Below, piece after piece: positions 3,848 through 11,275 of a stretch of 64,000 nucleotides of DNA. Numbering within the stretch: the first letter of the stretch is position 1; each line of letters opens with the position of its first letter. The notes beneath the pieces are model-generated. The model did not search any database and was not told the DNA's origin. It saw only the letters and a program-made list of their open reading frames with translations. The translations under genes were made by a program, and so were the position numbers. The stretch lies in the IMG/VR virus record IMGVR_UViG_3300027710_000011, positions 186,001 to 250,000 of that record; one strand, written 5' to 3'.

Positions 3848-5527
3848 TTAAATCAAGGCCCAGTTGGTTTCTGGGGGCGTGAGGACTGGCTGATTCAACA
3901 GCACAGGTGCGTAATGCTCTGGTATCTTAGGCAAAGGTTCAATGGAATCAATGCCAATCAACAACAAAGCTAAGCGAGTGCGGATGTCAGTTGGAATCTT
4001 CATCACTTTGTTACGAGGACTCCAGCCGGCTTTGCTGACCCAATGTTCAGGTAGCGTGATACGCCACTGATACTTACCCAAATCTTCGGTAAGCCTGTCG
4101 ATTACGACAATGACTGGGTTCAGACTTTTTGCAGTCTTAGCGCGAGAGCTCGTGCGTTTGTTGAACACGAAGCGCTTTTGCAGCTCGACGAGCTGTTCTT
4201 TCTCGATTGCATCTTTACGGTCAGCAATCATGCCAATATTGTCATCGATGGTGTCGATTGCAATACCGCCGACCAATGCGGCCAAGTGAAAGTGATTATT
4301 TTCCCACAAGTAAGCTTGAGAGAACGCAATCATTTTCAACAGGTCTGTTTTCTGCAGGCTAGGGATTGAACGCACCGGAACAAAGTGCTTCATTACCCAA
4401 CCAGCAATTGTGACTTGTTCACGAGTCAAACGAACGGCGCTCAGTTCCTGAACACTTTGATAAGACTCTGCGACAAGGCGTTGGAAATCGGGATTACTGC
4501 TCAGACGACGAACCAGTGATCTCTCACCAATTGGTTCGGTGCCCAATGCACGATCCATTTGGATTTCCAGGTAAGCACTGATGGTTTCAATGTTACCGAT
4601 TGACGTTGGTTGCTTGATCTTGAAGCCTTCAAGCTTCGAGAGGTTGCTGTCACCATCGCCGGCGTAGGAGCCTGAGTTCTTAGGACTCACGTTACCTACG
4701 TTGGTTTCGATACCGCGCAACTTCTGCAGAATGAAGTTGTACAGATATGCAGGCAGCGTGGTGATCTGGTTTGTTGTTGCAGGAGATTGGTTAATTCCCC
4801 GTACATCGCCGCAGCACAAACGAGTCACTACGGTTACGCTCAACACCCAGTTCGGAATGTCTTCTGACGAAATGCCCAGAAGAATGGCCGCATCATTGTG
4901 CCGATCTTTGGGGATCGTGTGGCGGATGAAGACCATCAAGCGATCCATTGCCTTGCACCGCGCCACATCGGACATAGCGAGCAATTGATAAGCCTGATAT
5001 TCCTTGAAGATGTTTCCAGCTTCACGACGGGTGTCGGTAGTGAACTGACGCCAGATGGGGAACATGGCACGCAAGGAGATGGACAGAGCCACCAACCAGC
5101 GATAATCCTCATCCAGATAAGTACGCTCCAACGTACCAGCCATTGTGCCGTTGGTATCGAAAGCACGATGAATGCTTGCGGGTACAACGATGTTGGCTCG
5201 AGACCATGCCCACATGAAAACATCTTCCTGAGGATGGTACTCCATCAGGTCGGCGATCAGTGGACGAAGGCGCGCAATACGGACGCTGATATCCCAAACG
5301 TTCTGGAACACAGCGTAGATCTTGTCGTAGATTGCAAAGATCTCGTCTTGCGTTTGCGGTTGGCACTGCGCCCAGTAGCCATTGATCTGCTCGAAGATGT
5401 CGAATTGGAAGTCCAAATCCTTAGAAGGAATGTTCCAACGCAGCTCGACACCTTTGTGCAGAATGACCAGTGCGGGCTCGGTCTTATTAAGACCACTGGC
5501 GTCCTGGGACAAAATGCGAATTTCCAT
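3848..5527 (-). CDS. Non-virion RNAP fifth (promoter-specificity) subunit, phiKZ gp68-like
   Basis: 559 aa; synteny gp67-gp68-gp69. Confidence 0.7.
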   Translation of the reverse strand: MEIRILSQDASGLNKTEPALVILHKGVELRWNIPSKDLDFQFDIFEQINGYWAQCQPQTQDEIFAIYDKIYAVFQNVWDISVRIARLRPLIADLMEYHPQEDVFMWAWSRANIVVPASIHRAFDTNGTMAGTLERTYLDEDYRWLVALSISLRAMFPIWRQFTTDTRREAGNIFKEYQAYQLLAMSDVARCKAMDRLMVFIRHTIPKDRHNDAAILLGISSEDIPNWVLSVTVVTRLCCGDVRGINQSPATTNQITTLPAYLYNFILQKLRGIETNVGNVSPKNSGSYAGDGDSNLSKLEGFKIKQPTSIGNIETISAYLEIQMDRALGTEPIGERSLVRRLSSNPDFQRLVAESYQSVQELSAVRLTREQVTIAGWVMKHFVPVRSIPSLQKTDLLKMIAFSQAYLWENNHFHLAALVGGIAIDTIDDNIGMIADRKDAIEKEQLVELQKRFVFNKRTSSRAKTAKSLNPVIVVIDRLTEDLGKYQWRITLPEHWVSKAGWSPRNKVMKIPTDIRTRLALLLIGIDSIEPLPKIPEHYAPVLLNQPVLTPPETNWALI

Positions 5528-5616
5528 GTAATGCTTATCCTTTTTTACACGTTCGCTAAGTCAAAGGTCGAATTACCTTTGATCAGAATTTGCGGATTGC
5601 ACTAATCCACAAGTAC

Positions 5617-5633
5617 GTGATATGTAACTGAAA
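5617..5633 (-). promoter_or_regulatory. Putative early promoter TTTCAGTTACATATCAC
   Basis: Motif copy 90 nt upstream of gp68, just downstream of the chmC terminator. Confidence 0.7.
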
Positions 5634-5716
5634 CAAGTTAGCTTTCAGTTGACTCACAGTACAGAAGATAACATTTATATGTTTTTTATTACCTATATAT
5701 GGTAAAAAATTAACAT

Positions 5717-5752
5717 CATAAAAGCCACCGGGGAGTACCCGGTGGCTTTATT
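5717..5752 (-). terminator. Terminator of chmC
   Basis: CATAAAAGCCACCGGG-gagta-CCCGGTGGCTTTATT. Confidence 0.85.
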
Positions 5753-5780
5753 AAGTAACGTTTAAGTTACCAGGACTTGC

Positions 5781-6497
5781 TTACCAGCTTTCGATATCGT
5801 CCATCGAATCTTCGACAGCAGGCTTGCCACCGCCACCATTGCCGCCACGGTTACCACCGTAGCTGTTGCCACCACCGCCTTGACCGCCGCGGTTACCGCC
5901 ACCGAAGCCACCGCCGCCGGCAGGCTTCTGCTCGGGTTCGACGTACTCAACCACGGCCAAGTGAGCCATGATCTTTTCCATCAGGTTGACCCAGCCCAGA
6001 GCAACGCGCTGCGAACCTTCGCCCTTGGACAGAGGAGTACCGTCGGACTTGATGAAGTTGTGGTACTCGTTCTCGCCGAACTGGAACTTGATCACCGGAC
6101 GACGTGGGGCGCTGATCGAGATGTAGACCACACCTTCTGCGTCCTTGCTGACGATCGTGCTCGAAACGATCGAGGGCTTTTCGGAACGCTGGCCGCCGCC
6201 CCAGGTGAAGTTCTTGTTGTCGATCTTCTCGCGGTACTCGCCAGGAGCATTGGCCGCCGTAGTGATCAGTTGTAGCAGAGAGAAGAAGGTCAACATATCC
6301 ATGTTGGCCGTGATCTTGCCGTAGTCGACGGTGTCCTCGGGATCATTGGTGTACACCACCATGCGAGGATTGTTCTTCACCAATTGCATGGCCAGCGAAG
6401 CCATCTTGCCCTTGGAGTTGGGGGAGTACAGCTTGAGCTTGGAGTTGTCCAGTGCGTTCTTTTGACGAGGAGGTGCGCGAAACTTATTGTCAGACAT
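5781..6497 (-). CDS. chmC: Nucleus-associated RNA-binding protein ChmC (phiKZ gp67-like)
   Basis: 238 aa between gp66 and gp68; Gly/RGG-rich disordered tail ending acidic (DDIESW); strong C/G-ending codon bias. Confidence 0.7.
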   Translation of the reverse strand: MSDNKFRAPPRQKNALDNSKLKLYSPNSKGKMASLAMQLVKNNPRMVVYTNDPEDTVDYGKITANMDMLTFFSLLQLITTAANAPGEYREKIDNKNFTWGGGQRSEKPSIVSSTIVSKDAEGVVYISISAPRRPVIKFQFGENEYHNFIKSDGTPLSKGEGSQRVALGWVNLMEKIMAHLAVVEYVEPEQKPAGGGGFGGGNRGGQGGGGNSYGGNRGGNGGGGKPAVEDSMDDIESW

Positions 6498-6500
6498 GAT

Positions 6501-7229
6501 TTATTCCTGTTGATCGGGTAAACGATACCAGTCTTTAAACTTCTCGCTTTTGCTTTCGAAGCGACTGTTAATCGTTGAATGAGGTATGCCTAAAGTTCTA
6601 GCCGCTTCTTTAAATCCAGGGTACTGGAGGCCGGCGCAAACTACAGGTTTTTGTTGAAGTTTTCCATTAGCAATCACTTTTTGATGATGTTCCTCTGAAA
6701 GAGGTTTACCTTTAAAATGATTACTAATTTGCTGCTTTTGCTTTTCTGAGATTACTCTCCCAGTAAACGCAGCGCTTAACTTCGCCTTATGTTCTTCAGA
6801 TAAAGTTCTTCCAGCATTTCTGCCTTTAGACGCTTCCTTCATCTTTAAGATAGTCTCAGGTGAACACTTTCGTCCAGTTCCTGCGAGACTAACTTTTAGA
6901 CGTGTTTCTGGACCAAATGTCATTCCTAACGTTGGTGCAGAAGTATCTTTAGAAACATTATACAAGGTACCTTCTGGAAACAATTCGTTTAAGACTACTT
7001 GTTCAACTTCTAATGGATTCACATCAGGAAGTGTGGGTATTCTTAAACAAACCAGCTCGTTACCTCTTTGATGAGCGCGCTGGAGTCCCCAGTTGTGATG
7101 GTCATTTCTTTTCAACATACGTTGATGATCGTAGGTCCGACGATCCAAGTCGTTACTACTTCCAACGTACGCCATTTGCTCAGTCAGATCTGCAATTACG
7201 TACAGACCTGGTACTTTTGGCCTTGCCAC
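6501..7229 (-). mobile_element. Free-standing GIY-YIG homing endonuclease with NUMOD3-type repeats and C-terminal HTH
   Basis: GLYVI...YVGSS..L.RR..DH motif with later E and YN; repeated SPETILKM/SEEHKAKLS/SEKQKQQIS units; KEAARTLGI HTH; visibly AT-richer than chmC; GTG start. Confidence 0.9.
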
Positions 7230-7276
7230 TGTTTCGCCTTGGCGCGTGGGGGAGGACGGAATTTGTTATCAGACAT
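7196..7276 (-). pseudogene. Orphaned original 5' end of chmC (26-codon mini-ORF MSDNKFRPPPRAK...)
   Basis: Own SD (AGAGG); the first 13 codons match ChmC MSDNKFRAPPRQK at 11 of 13 residues; overlaps the endonuclease GTG out of frame. Confidence 0.8.
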
Positions 7277-7407
7277 GCTGACCTCTAAAGAGAATAGCGT
7301 TCATCTGCCCAACTGTTAGGGCGCTATGACGCGGTTGAAAACTAGATCCTTTTTGTGGTGGGTTATTACCACAAAGGATCGCCTGGATCTGTAAATTCTG
7401 GCTTGCG

Positions 7408-8238
7408 TCAGAGTTCACGGAGAATGTCTCGCAGATAAGGATCCACGATTTGGCCAAAACCATAACGAACTTTCTCGTTCTGTGTGACTTGACTCCAGTT
7501 GTATTTGGCAGCCAAGTCTAGAACCTGTCGCCTAGCTTTTATTGGCCAAGGACGGAAGTGTTCGTTGTCACCAAAGATCTGAAGCATGTCTTCTCGAAAA
7601 GGGATGCTCGAGAGTTCTTTGCCATTCAGATACTTGGTATACCACATGAACTTATTCTTGATGGTACCCGTGTGGGATTCCAGAAGATGTAAGTTCGAAA
7701 ATCCCTTAGCTAAGAGGTCGTACGCAAAGTGCGTCAACATCAAAGCCTTACGTGCTTCCACGTCTAGGATTTTCAATGTGTAGCGTTTAACCGTGTTTGG
7801 ATGTGCGCGGATATAAGCTGATAGTGTTTCAACCATCATTGCCGTATACGCCAGCTGATTCGCTGTTATGTCACCACGGAGTATCGCATGCTTGTATTTT
7901 TGACCCATTCCAGCGTAATCACTCACGTAGAGAACTACATCCGTTCGGGATGCAGTCTCTACGGAGATTACGTGTTTCAGTTGATCGATTTCACTTGTGA
8001 AAGCATCGATGAAATCCTGGACACTCGCATTCTGCAACTGCTCCTTATCAACAGAGTAGTACAGATTGCGAAAAATCGTCTTCAAGTTGACCCAGATCAC
8101 AGCGTAACCTGGTAACAACTTCTTCGTCTGGTCTGGTTTGTCAGGATGAATACCCATCGCACCTTCAATTGCCAGGGACGTAGCAATTGAGATTGGGTAT
8201 TGTCCTAACACACGATCTGAAAGAACACTGGTCTTCAT
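7408..8238 (-). CDS. phiKZ gp66-like conserved protein
   Basis: 276 aa, between the SbcD-like gene and chmC in the core block. Confidence 0.7.
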   Translation of the reverse strand: MKTSVLSDRVLGQYPISIATSLAIEGAMGIHPDKPDQTKKLLPGYAVIWVNLKTIFRNLYYSVDKEQLQNASVQDFIDAFTSEIDQLKHVISVETASRTDVVLYVSDYAGMGQKYKHAILRGDITANQLAYTAMMVETLSAYIRAHPNTVKRYTLKILDVEARKALMLTHFAYDLLAKGFSNLHLLESHTGTIKNKFMWYTKYLNGKELSSIPFREDMLQIFGDNEHFRPWPIKARRQVLDLAAKYNWSQVTQNEKVRYGFGQIVDPYLRDILREL

Positions 8239-10269: not shown

Positions 10270-10698
10270 TTAGACCGGAGCGGCGTCGGCGACGACTTCG
10301 CTCAGTTCTTGAGGAGCAGGCGCATCGCCGGCGGGAGCTGTGTCGACGGACTCGGGCGCCACTTCAGCGGCCTTGAAGTACTGGTAGCCTTCAACAGGCT
10401 TCTCGACCAACATCAGGCCCAGCTGCACATGGCCCTTGTTTTCCACGCCGACGGCCGACAGTTGACGAAGCAGTTCAGCAGTCATTTCTTCGCTCAGCTC
10501 GAGGAAGCGGGTCTGCATGGTGTTGGTCTCGTCTTCCAGGAAGGCGCAGAGGGTACGCTGGCCGTCAGCAGTGTGCGAGACGATCAGGCGGAAGAAGCCG
10601 GTGTTGGGGCGGAAGAAAGGCACCAGGCACAGCGACGAACCGTTGGCCAGCAGGGCAGGAGGGGTGATCAGTTGAGCAGCATCGACGTTGCTCATCAT
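10270..10698 (-). CDS. Hypothetical protein with highly expressed codon profile
   Basis: 142 aa, C/G-ending codons, acidic Ala/Pro tail. Confidence 0.75.
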   Translation of the reverse strand: MMSNVDAAQLITPPALLANGSSLCLVPFFRPNTGFFRLIVSHTADGQRTLCAFLEDETNTMQTRFLELSEEMTAELLRQLSAVGVENKGHVQLGLMLVEKPVEGYQYFKAAEVAPESVDTAPAGDAPAPQELSEVVADAAPV

Positions 10699-10841
10699 GC
10701 CGTAGCCTGGGCGCGCAGAGCGTTGCCGGAGGCGATCATTGTGTTGGCCATGATGAGGCCGACATTGGCGTTGGCAACTTCTTGAGCGATGCCGCGGAAT
10801 GCTTCGTTCATGTCCAGGGGCTTTTGGTCGTGATGGTTCAT
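10695..10841 (-). CDS. 48-aa small protein missed by the ORF track (MNHHDQKPLDMNEAFRGIAQEVANANVGLIMANTMIASGNALRAQATA)
   Basis: GAGGAA SD; ATGA stop/start overlap with the 10698 gene; same codon bias. Confidence 0.75.
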   Translation of the reverse strand: MNHHDQKPLDMNEAFRGIAQEVANANVGLIMANTMIASGNALRAQATA

Positions 10842-10858
10842 GTGTTCCTCTGAAAGGT

Positions 10859-11275
10859 TCATAGAGCGTTGTTGTTGAGATCTGAAAACTCAGCTAATTT
10901 TCCGTCCACGATGCTCAGCAACTTAGCCACAGAGAATGTTTCACCATTCAAAGTAACGGTTGCGTCGATCGTCATCGTCGTCTTTGAGCCGGAAACAGTT
11001 GGATCTGTATCAGCTACGGTGACGTTGATGTCAACGGAATCATAGTAAGTGCCCAGGTAAATATTTAATTGCTTTCTTACCGATTCTGCAGCAGCAGTCA
11101 TGTCTCTTGGATTCTCTTTCATGATCCAAGGGAAGCTAGAAATGCTGCCTGCATACAACGTAGATTGCAGGTAGTCGGACACAAAGAAGTAAACCATCAA
11201 GTAGTCTACTCGTTTTGCGTTTGACCGAACCCAGCCATCTGTAGAAAGGGTCGGTACTGGATTGATAGTGGCCAT
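10859..11275 (-). CDS. Conserved core protein (gp61-like)
   Basis: Likely start MATINPVPTLSTDGWV with GAGG SD. Confidence 0.7.
   Translation of the reverse strand: MATINPVPTLSTDGWVRSNAKRVDYLMVYFFVSDYLQSTLYAGSISSFPWIMKENPRDMTAAAESVRKQLNIYLGTYYDSVDINVTVADTDPTVSGSKTTMTIDATVTLNGETFSVAKLLSIVDGKLAEFSDLNNNAL

What the first reader, a model, noticed from the sequence alone, without database searches (positions are those of the whole stretch)
6459..7290. Homing endonuclease inserted into the 5' end of chmC, carrying a synonymously recoded replacement start
Upstream of the GIY-YIG gene is an SD plus ATG TCT GAT AAC AAA TTC CGT CCT CCC CCA CGC GCC AAG (MSDNKFRPPPRAK). Three nt after the endonuclease stop, intact chmC begins ATG TCT GAC AAT AAG TTT CGC GCA CCT CCT CGT CAA AAG (MSDNKFRAPPRQK). 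Eleven of 13 residues match, yet 8 of the 10 shared non-Met codons differ at the wobble base. Inference: the element invaded a probably essential nucleus gene at about codon 13 without splicing. It would have restored the gene with a recoded, cleavage-resistant N-terminus and kept the old start as a leader ORF that overlaps and may throttle the endonuclease GTG. It could act as a weapon against co-infecting relatives, as described for the intron-encoded endonuclease of PhiPA3, but here intron-less and aimed at chmC.
Basis: partly seen in the sequence, partly recalled or inferred. Interest (0 to 1): 0.85.

Follow-up and report, generated by a model that had tools for sequence, protein, structure and literature searches.

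The report
Homing endonuclease mis-inserted into chmC start
A selfish nuclease gene that normally sits just in front of the jumbo-phage nucleus gene chmC has landed 13 codons inside it here, bringing a differently spelled copy of the gene's start and leaving the old start as a short leader; this is a clear natural example of a known kind of event, not a new mechanism.

Summary
A close relative without the endonuclease (L003) has the empty site. Its chmC start is 39/39 nt identical to the upstream remnant (7276-7238). Window sequence on both sides of a 779-nt insert (7237-6459) maps to the same 39-40 nt of L003. The functional copy (6497-6459) matches only 26/39 nt but 11/13 residues.

The insert holds an intact GIY-YIG/NUMOD3 endonuclease gene. 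No intron RNA was detected, and chmC has its own ribosome-binding site and ATG.

New here: the three known homologues of this endonuclease (43-58% identity) all sit directly 5' of chmC in other chimalliviruses, with no remnant. In a second, about 98.5% identical pair with and without the gene (L012/L025), 10 of the first 51 chmC bases differ (P about 1e-9).

So this endonuclease family lives in front of chmC and travels with a re-spelled chmC 5' end, which is probably its target and immunity determinant. The window records an off-register acquisition.

Cleavage, immunity, leader-ORF throttling and a weapon role are inferences. The closest analogue is the endonuclease-plus-duplicated-gene-end hybrids of fungal mitochondria. 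I rate it a new variant of a known kind, of moderate interest.

The parts
7408..8238 (-). Conserved upstream neighbour gene (276 aa, PHROG 3229). It marks the left side of the locus in all relatives.
   Evidence: ORF list; PHROG hit; syntenic with chmC in nearly all of the roughly 40 distinct chmC loci recovered.
7337..7380 (-). Inverted repeat followed by a T-run after the upstream gene's stop. It looks like a terminator.
   Evidence: Read from the sequence; also present in L003. The consensus scan did not call it.
7297..7305 (-). Conserved GATGAACGC block 21-29 nt 5' of the original chmC ATG. It is a candidate promoter or 5'-UTR element that now precedes the leader ORF.
   Evidence: Conserved in the window, L003, L007, L009, L057 and L058. 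There are only 2 copies in the window, no more than chance, so its function is unproven.
7282..7285 (-). Original chmC Shine-Dalgarno sequence (GAGG), five nt before the old ATG.
   Evidence: Sequence; identical in L003 in front of its functional chmC.
7238..7276 (-). Remnant of the original chmC start, codons 1-13 (MSDNKFRPPPRAK).
   Evidence: 39/39 nt identical to the chmC start of the endonuclease-less relative L003. The BLAST alignment to L003 ends exactly at 7238.
7196..7276 (-). 26-codon leader mini-ORF: the old 13 codons, 13 out-of-frame codons across the endonuclease start, and a TAA. It overlaps the endonuclease ORF by 34 nt.
   Evidence: ORF list. It occurs only in this phage lineage, so there is no conservation evidence for or against a function.
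6459..7237 (-). The 779-nt insert relative to the empty allele. It contains 8 nt, the endonuclease gene, a 3-nt spacer, and the replacement ATG plus 12 codons. The boundaries are ambiguous by 3 nt because AAG ends both copies.
   Evidence: BLAST against L003. GC is 39-41%, against 53-63% in chmC. Third-position GC is 0.32 in the endonuclease and 0.38 in the new 13 codons, against 0.80 in chmC codons 14-190.
6501..7229 (-). Free-standing GIY-YIG homing endonuclease gene (242 aa, GTG start, weak AAGG site 7 nt upstream that straddles the junction).
   Evidence: Pfam GIY-YIG at 26.4 bits (cut-off 22.6) and NUMOD3 at 38.7 bits (cut-off 20.4). It aligns to the I-TevI catalytic domain 1MK0/1LN0 residues 3-91, and the GIY, YVGS, Arg, His, Glu and Asn positions are present. 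PHROG 'homing endonuclease'. The start aligns with the ATG starts of homologues.
6505..6508 (-). Replacement Shine-Dalgarno sequence (AGGA) for chmC. It lies inside the last codons of the endonuclease gene, 7 nt before ATG 6497.
   Evidence: Sequence. L012 likewise supplies a new AAGGA site within its cassette.
6459..6497 (-). Replacement chmC start, codons 1-13 (MSDNKFRAPPRQK). It matches the old copy at 26/39 nt and 11/13 residues.
   Evidence: With five outgroups, 7 clear plus 5 ambiguous window-specific changes fall here, against 0 in codons 14-26 and about 1.4 per 13 codons elsewhere (P = 0.0014).
5781..6497 (-). Intact chmC (238 aa): a flexible N-terminal tail, a Whirly/PUR-like domain, and a disordered Gly-rich C-terminus.
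   Evidence: tblastn hit to PHIKZ067 at 32.5%, E = 4e-17; PhiKZ gp67 is ChmC (PMC11077065). PHROG 3284. AlphaFold model with pLDDT 76; the best PDB folds are human PURA and T. brucei MRP1/2, and these matches are weak.

Best explanation
The insert is a free-standing, I-TevI-like GIY-YIG/NUMOD3 homing endonuclease gene. It belongs to a small family whose normal home is the spacer immediately 5' of chmC in nucleus-forming jumbo phages.

The gene moves as a compact cassette with the first roughly 13-17 codons of the donor's chmC. Those codons are spelled differently, mostly at synonymous sites, from the alleles of phages that lack the endonuclease. That stretch is most likely the enzyme's recognition and cleavage region, so the re-spelled version protects the carrier.

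In the window's lineage the acquisition was off-register. I infer the following sequence of events:
1. A break occurred near chmC nt 39/40 of an L003-like recipient.
2. The right-hand end copied leftwards from the donor, through donor codons 13-1 and the endonuclease gene.
3. The unresected left-hand end was joined illegitimately 8 nt upstream of the endonuclease start.

The recipient's own promoter region, ribosome-binding site, ATG and 13 codons therefore survive as a leader mini-ORF. chmC is now translated from a start and ribosome-binding site supplied by the cassette. All three ORFs are probably read from the original chmC transcript.

The endonuclease has a GTG start and a weak ribosome-binding site, and it lies under the strongly initiated leader ORF. 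It is therefore probably made at a low level.

Shown: the anatomy, the empty site, the family's fixed location, the re-spelled tract in two independent pairs, and the absence of an intron. Inferred: the target site, the break position, immunity, the repair route and the expression level.
For: - Empty site. L003, L007, L009, L057, L058 and L060 have the upstream gene, a spacer of about 130 nt, then a single chmC start. L003 matches the remnant at 39/39 nt, and both window flanks map onto L003 6000-6039.
- Real structure. The region is identical in three assemblies.
- Intact enzyme. Pfam and I-TevI alignments show the catalytic positions present.
- Family location. Homologues at 58%, 51% and 43% identity (L010, L011, L012/L013) all lie between the same two genes. 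They abut or overlap the chmC ATG, with no remnant. None of the other distinct chmC loci recovered has an endonuclease there.
- Second pair. L012 and L025 (without) are 98.4-98.9% identical in the flanks. The insertion is clean and sits 2 nt before the ATG. Ten of the first 51 chmC nt differ and the next difference is at nt 196 (binomial P about 4e-10 to 8e-10).
- Step-like boundary in the window. Window-specific changes are confined to codons 3-12.
- Composition. The third-position GC of the new 13 codons resembles the endonuclease, not chmC.
- No intron. Rfam finds none at E <= 1.
- Precedent. Illegitimate break repair at microhomologies, and endonuclease starts that overlap upstream ORFs (mobA with GUG), are documented in T4 (PMC2988022).
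Against: - No donor phage carrying the exact 'new' 39 nt was found. Donor origin is therefore inferred rather than shown.
- The new 13 codons differ from every relative by 10-13 of 39 nt. That is more than codons 14-30 differ (6-9 of 51), so simple hitch-hiking of an averagely diverged donor does not fully explain them.
- L003 has its own cluster of derived synonymous changes in codons 14-27. This leaves it open whether the donor tract ends at codon 13 or nearer codon 27-37.
- Cleavage specificity, immunity and expression are untested.
- The predicted fold of the leader RNA is no better than shuffled sequence (z = -0.35).
- An endonuclease of a nucleus-forming phage must reach the DNA inside the phage nucleus. 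The PhiPA3 work showed this is not automatic.
Confidence: 0.72

Rival explanations
1. Recoding in place. The endonuclease cassette inserted with a 39-nt duplication of the recipient's own chmC start. One copy was then re-spelled by selection, either to escape self-cleavage or to stop the direct repeats from recombining the insert out.
For: - The two copies encode nearly the same peptide.
- The changes stop exactly at the end of the duplicated segment.
- Every codon from 3 to 12 is altered, including two conserved or variable residues. This looks more thorough than ordinary divergence.
Against: - The remnant has no changes relative to L003 while the other copy has 13, against a local background of about 5%. 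That would need extremely fast, one-sided change.
- The L012/L025 pair shows the same re-spelled tract with no duplication at all, so the tract arrives with the endonuclease.
- The new codons have endonuclease-like composition, and use TTT, which chmC otherwise never uses.
Confidence: 0.1
2. Fossil. The anatomy arose as described, but the endonuclease is no longer active, or cannot enter the phage nucleus. The locus would then be a neutral scar with no present homing or competitive effect.
For: - Homing endonuclease genes commonly decay after fixation.
- The GTG start and weak ribosome-binding site sit under an overlapping ORF.
- Only one lineage carries this version.
- Nuclear import was limiting for PhiPA3 gp210.
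Against: - The ORF is full length with all catalytic positions present.
- The family has stayed intact across 43-58% divergence at the same locus.
- The L012/L025 pair is about 98.5% identical in its flanks, which implies a recent gain or loss.
Confidence: 0.15
3. An intron, or translational bypass, joins the old start to the chmC body, so that the old start is the real one.
For: Phage endonucleases of this type are often intron-encoded, and the old start keeps the stronger ribosome-binding site.
Against: - No group I or group II intron match at E <= 1.
- The insert is 779 nt, which is not a multiple of 3.
- Removing it is unnecessary, because a complete ORF with its own start follows.
- Homologues are plainly free-standing in the spacer.
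Confidence: 0.02
4. Assembly chimera of two co-occurring strains, one contributing each copy of the start.
For: The sequence comes from metagenome assemblies, and L003-like strains do exist.
Against: An identical 980-nt structure appears in three assemblies from different samples and pipelines, on contigs of 19.8-277 kb.
Confidence: 0.01

Closest known systems
Mobile endonuclease ORFs with duplicated gene ends in fungal mitochondria (Allomyces macrogynus atp6; Glomus atp6, atp9, cox2, nad3; PMC3630166)
   Same: - An endonuclease ORF (LAGLIDADG in most cases, GIY-YIG in Glomus atp9) arrives with a foreign copy of the end of an essential gene.
- The foreign copy becomes the expressed one, and the displaced native end remains beside it.
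- The native piece is (near-)identical to close relatives. The inserted piece is 64-81% identical in DNA but nearly identical in protein. The figures here are 100% for the native piece and 67% in DNA with 11/13 residues for the inserted piece.
   Different: - This case is the mirror image: the 5' end rather than the 3' end is duplicated.
- The displaced piece keeps the promoter side and becomes a translated leader rather than a silent tail.
- The endonuclease is a separate ORF in another frame, not fused in frame.
- The host is a phage, not an organelle.
Free-standing Seg/Mob endonucleases of T4-like phages ('intronless homing', marker exclusion; PMC2988022)
   Same: - A GIY-YIG enzyme lies between genes, with presence/absence polymorphism among close relatives.
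- Adjacent markers are co-converted.
- The target is a conserved essential gene next door.
- Low-level translation comes from starts that overlap upstream ORFs (segC, segF, mobA with GUG, mobC).
- Rare transposition-like insertions into coding regions occur (mobE in Aeh1 nrdA, mobA in gene 60/39).
   Different: - Those intragenic insertions split the gene into two polypeptides that reassemble. Here the gene stays whole because the cassette supplies a replacement start.
- The inferred cut site is within tens of nt of the insertion, closer to I-TevI geometry than to the distant sites of Seg enzymes.
I-TevI (intron-encoded GIY-YIG endonuclease of T4 td)
   Same: - The catalytic domain aligns (1MK0).
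- It has a modular NUMOD3-type DNA-binding region.
- I-TevI cuts 23-25 nt from the insertion site (PMC2988022), a scale similar to the 39-51 nt re-spelled tract here.
   Different: There is no intron here, the identity is low, and the specificity is unknown.
PhiPA3 gp210 intron endonuclease (PMC11620839)
   Same: A homing endonuclease in a chimallivirus that targets a conserved essential gene of related phages. Silent recoding of the target protects against it (shown experimentally there with 17 silent changes).
   Different: gp210 is an HNH nickase inside a group I intron in a virion RNA polymerase gene. The enzyme here is GIY-YIG, intron-less and aimed at chmC. No competition data exist for it.

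Membership tests
GIY-YIG homing endonuclease (I-TevI/Seg-like) | GIY-YIG catalytic domain with conserved Tyr, Tyr, Arg, His, Glu and Asn positions | tested here: met
   Pfam PF01541 at 26.4 bits (cut-off 22.6). Aligns to I-TevI 1MK0/1LN0 residues 3-91 with the motif positions present. These positions are invariant across the four family members.
GIY-YIG homing endonuclease (I-TevI/Seg-like) | Appended modular DNA-binding region (NUMOD motifs) | tested here: met
   Pfam NUMOD3 at 38.7 bits (cut-off 20.4), two stretches. PHROG 314 'homing endonuclease' over residues 138-235.
GIY-YIG homing endonuclease (I-TevI/Seg-like) | Presence/absence polymorphism at one fixed site among close relatives | tested here: met
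   Window versus L003 and L012 versus L025. The same locus is occupied in L010 and L011.
GIY-YIG homing endonuclease (I-TevI/Seg-like) | Co-conversion of flanking sequence with the endonuclease gene | tested here: met
   10 of 51 nt differ next to the insert, against a 1.2% background, in L012/L025 (P about 1e-9). 13 of 39 nt differ in the window, with a step-like boundary.
GIY-YIG homing endonuclease (I-TevI/Seg-like) | Site-specific cleavage of the endonuclease-less allele and biased inheritance | not testable with these tools
   Needs protein and DNA substrates, or mixed infections.
Intron-encoded homing endonuclease (group I intron) | Ribozyme core flanking the ORF, with the host gene restored by splicing | tested here: not met
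   No Rfam intron match at E <= 1 in 5400-7700. The downstream gene is complete with its own start. The insert is 779 nt. Homologues lie in the spacer.
Mitochondrial-type endonuclease / duplicated-gene-end hybrid | Endonuclease ORF flanked by a foreign expressed copy and a displaced native copy of a gene terminus. The native copy matches relatives; the foreign copy diverges in DNA but not in protein. | tested here: met
   The native remnant is 39/39 nt identical to L003. The replacement is 26/39 nt and 11/13 aa. Expression of either copy was not tested.
Mitochondrial-type endonuclease / duplicated-gene-end hybrid | Endonuclease ORF and inserted terminus in phase with the host gene | tested here: not met
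   The endonuclease is in a different frame from the leader. It is separated from chmC by a stop codon and 3 nt.
ChmC (chimallivirus nucleus-associated RNA-binding protein) | Sequence homology to PhiKZ gp67 / PhiPA3 gp61 | tested here: met
   tblastn hit to PHIKZ067 at 32.5% over residues 31-191, E = 4e-17. gp67 is named ChmC in PMC11077065.
ChmC (chimallivirus nucleus-associated RNA-binding protein) | Whirly/PUR-like fold plus a disordered Gly/Asn-rich C-terminus | tested here: inconclusive
   The model (pLDDT 76) has repeated beta-sheet and helix units and a tail with pLDDT below 50 from residue 194. The top PDB folds are PURA and MRP1/2, the same class the ChmC paper reports, but the matches are weak (E 0.02-0.1, TM 0.40-0.45).
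ChmC (chimallivirus nucleus-associated RNA-binding protein) | Conserved gene neighbourhood with non-virion RNA polymerase subunits | tested here: met
   RNA polymerase Rpb2 and Rpb1 domain genes flank the cluster in L003, L007 and L012. The paper describes the same cluster.

The most novel reading that the evidence does not exclude
The most novel reading the evidence allows has two parts.

First, the leftover start is not a passive scar. It would be a functioning upstream ORF that captures the very strong early chmC translation signals and sets the endonuclease dose. It might also yield a 26-residue peptide carrying the conserved ChmC N-terminal motif.

Second, the endonuclease plus the re-spelled chmC 5' end would act as an interference weapon. 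During co-infection it would cut the mRNA-export factor gene of related nucleus-forming phages inside a shared nucleus. The clusters of synonymous change in chmC codons 3-27, in both carriers and non-carriers (window, L012, L003), would then be the trace of that arms race.
Probability: 0.2. Interest if true: 0.7.

Novelty: new variant of a known kind. Interest (0 to 1): 0.5.

Why it matters
The finding identifies a homing endonuclease family dedicated to chmC, a gene reported as required for chimallivirus infection. It also pins the probable target to a stretch of about 50 nt, which can be tested directly with two natural pairs of alleles (window/L003 and L012/L025).

The window is a rare natural record of an imprecise homing event. 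The junction probably marks the break point, and the event shows how a phage can survive an insertion inside an essential gene: the mobile cassette brings its own replacement start. This mirrors the duplicated-gene-end hybrids long known in fungal mitochondria and extends that pattern to phages and to the 5' end of a gene.

For annotation, the duplicated start and the local burst of synonymous change could be mistaken for an intron, a frameshift or positive selection on ChmC.

It does not reveal a new mechanism.

Tried and rejected
- Megablast of the locus against GenBank phages found nothing. The nearest named phage protein is only 42% identical (Burkholderia phage FLC9), so public phage genomes could not provide the comparison. 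Metagenome proteins did.
- The Rfam scan at a permissive threshold gave only sub-threshold hits to unrelated small RNA families, all well below their gathering scores, and no intron.
- Folding the leader and endonuclease start region gave a structure no better than shuffles (z = -0.35). I dropped the idea of a ribosome-binding-site-sequestering hairpin like those of T4 endonucleases.
- The sigma-70 promoter and terminator scan was uninformative. The conserved GATGAACGC block is not a repeated motif in the window.
- I first read the decline in divergence from L003 (0.33, 0.21, 0.13, then 0.05 per 13 codons) as a co-conversion gradient. Polarising with five outgroups showed a step instead. Window-specific changes stop at codon 12, and the changes in codons 14-27 are L003-specific.
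- Searches with an endonuclease family alignment in IMG/VR and in GTDB genomes found no further members. L010 has no close endonuclease-less partner (best 68%), so only two pairs are available.
- A -1 frameshift from the leader into the endonuclease frame is open between the frames, but there is no canonical slippery site. I considered it and set it aside.
- Pfam gives no family for ChmC.
Full report
**1. What is in the sequence**

All relevant genes are on the minus strand. Reading 5' to 3', the locus contains:
- a conserved 276-aa gene (8238-7408);
- an inverted repeat with a T-run (about 7380-7337);
- a conserved GATGAACGC block (7305-7297);
- GAGG (7285-7282) and ATG 7276, opening a 26-codon ORF whose first 13 codons read MSDNKFRPPPRAK, with TAA at 7198-7196;
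- overlapping it in another frame, a GTG at 7229 that opens a 242-aa ORF ending at TAA 6503-6501;
- three nt later, ATG 6497, which opens a 238-aa ORF (to 5781) beginning MSDNKFRAPPRQK.

11/13 residues are shared. 8 of the 10 shared non-Met codons differ at the third base. In total 13 of 39 nt differ.

The 242-aa protein has a GIY-YIG domain and NUMOD3 motifs above Pfam's cut-offs. It aligns with the I-TevI catalytic domain with the motif positions present.

The 238-aa protein is a homologue of PHIKZ067, which is ChmC (PMC11077065). Its model has a flexible N-terminal tail, a repeated sheet-helix domain and a disordered Gly-rich tail. The best PDB folds are PURA and MRP1/2, though these matches are weak.

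**2. Is it real and non-random**

The window is IMG/VR contig 3300027710_000011. The 980-nt region is base-for-base identical in two further assemblies from other samples, L014 and L015.

A search of metagenome proteins found close ChmC relatives at 70-87% identity. Their contigs (L003, L007, L009, L057, L058, L060) all show the 276-aa gene, a spacer of about 130 nt and a single chmC start, with no endonuclease.

The chmC start of L003 is 39/39 nt identical to the window's upstream copy. BLAST places window 11477-7238 on L003 1782-6039 and window 6498-1 on L003 6000-12464. L003 therefore carries the empty site. Relative to it, the window has a 779-nt insert after codon 13, flanked by two versions of the same 39 nt.

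A motif scan of 69 fetched loci found two copies only in copies of this same phage.

**3. The endonuclease family and its normal home**

Only three homologues exist in the 5.8-billion-protein collection, at 58%, 51% and 43% identity. All three lie between the same two genes in other chimalliviruses. They overlap the chmC ATG (L010, L011) or sit 30 nt before it (L012/L013), and none has a remnant of chmC upstream.

Synteny of the 276-aa gene, chmC and the 559-aa gene holds across the roughly 40 distinct chmC loci recovered. Only these lineages have an endonuclease there.

The family's usual position is therefore the spacer directly 5' of chmC. The window is the exception.

**4. A second, cleaner pair**

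L012 (with the endonuclease) and L025 (without) are 98.4-98.9% identical over 5.5 kb of flanks. In L012 the endonuclease gene replaces two bases just before the chmC ATG, and there is no duplication.

Even so, 10 of the first 51 nt of chmC differ (positions 9-51; eight synonymous codons and one Lys/Arg change at codon 12). The next difference is at nt 196. Against a 1.2% background, P is about 4e-10 to 8e-10. The nearest difference on the left is 135 nt away.

A re-spelled chmC 5' end therefore travels with the endonuclease, whether or not there is a duplication. In both pairs codon 12 is changed at two or more positions.

**5. Where the window's changes lie**

Raw divergence from L003 falls from 0.33 (codons 1-13) to 0.21, 0.13 and 0.05, which looked like a gradient. 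Polarising each difference with five outgroups changes the picture:
- Window-specific changes number 7 clear plus 5 ambiguous in codons 1-13, none in codons 14-26, and about 1.4 per 13 codons elsewhere (P = 0.0014).
- L003 has its own cluster of 7 derived synonymous changes in codons 14-27 (P = 0.002).

So the foreign tract in the window ends at or very near the same coordinate as the left junction, chmC nt 39/40.

The new 13 codons have third-position GC of 0.38, like the endonuclease (0.32) and unlike chmC codons 14-190 (0.80). They use TTT, which chmC otherwise never uses.

**6. Most likely history and mechanism**

Shown:
- the anatomy and the empty allele;
- the fixed location of the family;
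- a co-travelling re-spelled tract in two independent pairs;
- no intron RNA, and an independent start for chmC.

Inferred:
- The enzyme recognises and cuts the conserved chmC 5' region (roughly codons 3-17, possibly to 27) in phages that lack it.
- Carriers are protected by the re-spelled tract.
- In the window's ancestor, which was L003-like, the break was near nt 39/40. The right end copied from the donor through donor codons 13-1 and the endonuclease gene. The left end was joined illegitimately 8 nt before the endonuclease start. Illegitimate repair at microhomologies is documented for T4 (PMC2988022).

This explains three things: why both boundaries coincide, why the remnant is recipient-like, and why the replacement is foreign.

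Consequences for expression:
- The original chmC signals now drive the leader ORF.
- The endonuclease has a GTG start and an AAGG site created at the junction, and is overlapped by the leader for 34 nt. T4 segC, segF, mobA (GUG) and mobC show similar overlaps, which are thought to limit translation.
- chmC uses an AGGA site inside the endonuclease's last codons.

No hairpin of note covers the endonuclease start.

**7. Rivals**

- Recoding in place after a duplication is unlikely. The change is one-sided (0 versus 13 differences), and the L012/L025 pair shows the tract without any duplication.
- An inactive fossil cannot be excluded, although the ORF and its motifs are intact.
- An intron or translational bypass, and an assembly chimera, are excluded for practical purposes.

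**8. Comparison with known systems**

- The closest match in form is the endonuclease-plus-duplicated-terminus hybrids of fungal mitochondria. There, the native displaced terminus matches close relatives, and the inserted one is 64-81% identical in DNA but conserved in protein (PMC3630166). Here the arrangement is mirrored at the 5' end, in a phage, and the displaced piece becomes a leader ORF.
- In mechanism it belongs with the free-standing Seg/Mob endonucleases of T4-like phages. It differs from the gene-splitting insertions mobE and mobA because the gene stays whole.
- The PhiPA3 gp210 case (PMC11620839) is a useful functional analogy, including protection by silent recoding. That enzyme, however, is an intron-encoded HNH nickase, and its effect depended on entry into the phage nucleus.

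**9. Verdict**

Cleavage resistance, throttling by the leader and a weapon role remain hypotheses. I rate it a new variant of a known kind, with interest about 0.5.

Noticed in passing
L003 964-1782; the corresponding empty site is near window 11477/11464: The relative that lacks the chmC endonuclease carries a different GIY-YIG endonuclease (272 aa, 27% identical) between its 209-aa and 138-aa genes. The window lacks it. The two phages therefore differ reciprocally in endonuclease content.
   Followed up: partly
L003 6040-6081 (chmC codons 14-27): L003 has a cluster of 7 lineage-specific synonymous changes immediately downstream of the window's insertion point (P about 0.002). This could be target-site escape in a phage without the endonuclease, or the ancestral state of the window's recipient.
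   Followed up: partly
window 7297-7305 (-): A GATGAACGC block 21-29 nt before the original chmC ATG is conserved in six related phages, although the spacer around it varies. It may be a promoter or 5'-UTR element. It is not repeated elsewhere in the window beyond chance.
   Followed up: partly
window 7337-7380 (-): A 13-15 bp inverted repeat followed by TTTT lies just after the 276-aa gene's stop. It is also present in L003 and looks like an intrinsic terminator between that gene and chmC.
   Followed up: no
window 10270-10862 (-): A gene that is a single 194-aa ORF in L003 is split into 55-aa and 142-aa ORFs in the window. It is called as different fragment pairs in the sister assemblies L014 (57+82) and L015 (64+117).
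   Followed up: no
window 5781-6458 (-): The chmC body has very strong codon bias (third-position GC 0.80; TTC 7:0 over TTT, AAG 16:0 over AAA). This fits the high expression reported for ChmC and contrasts with a third-position GC of 0.32 in the endonuclease.
   Followed up: no
window 6474-6476 (-), ChmC residue 8: The replacement start has Ala at residue 8. Pro is nearly invariant there among 20 ChmC relatives, and FRAPPR is unique in the set. The residue lies in the predicted flexible N-terminal tail.
   Followed up: no
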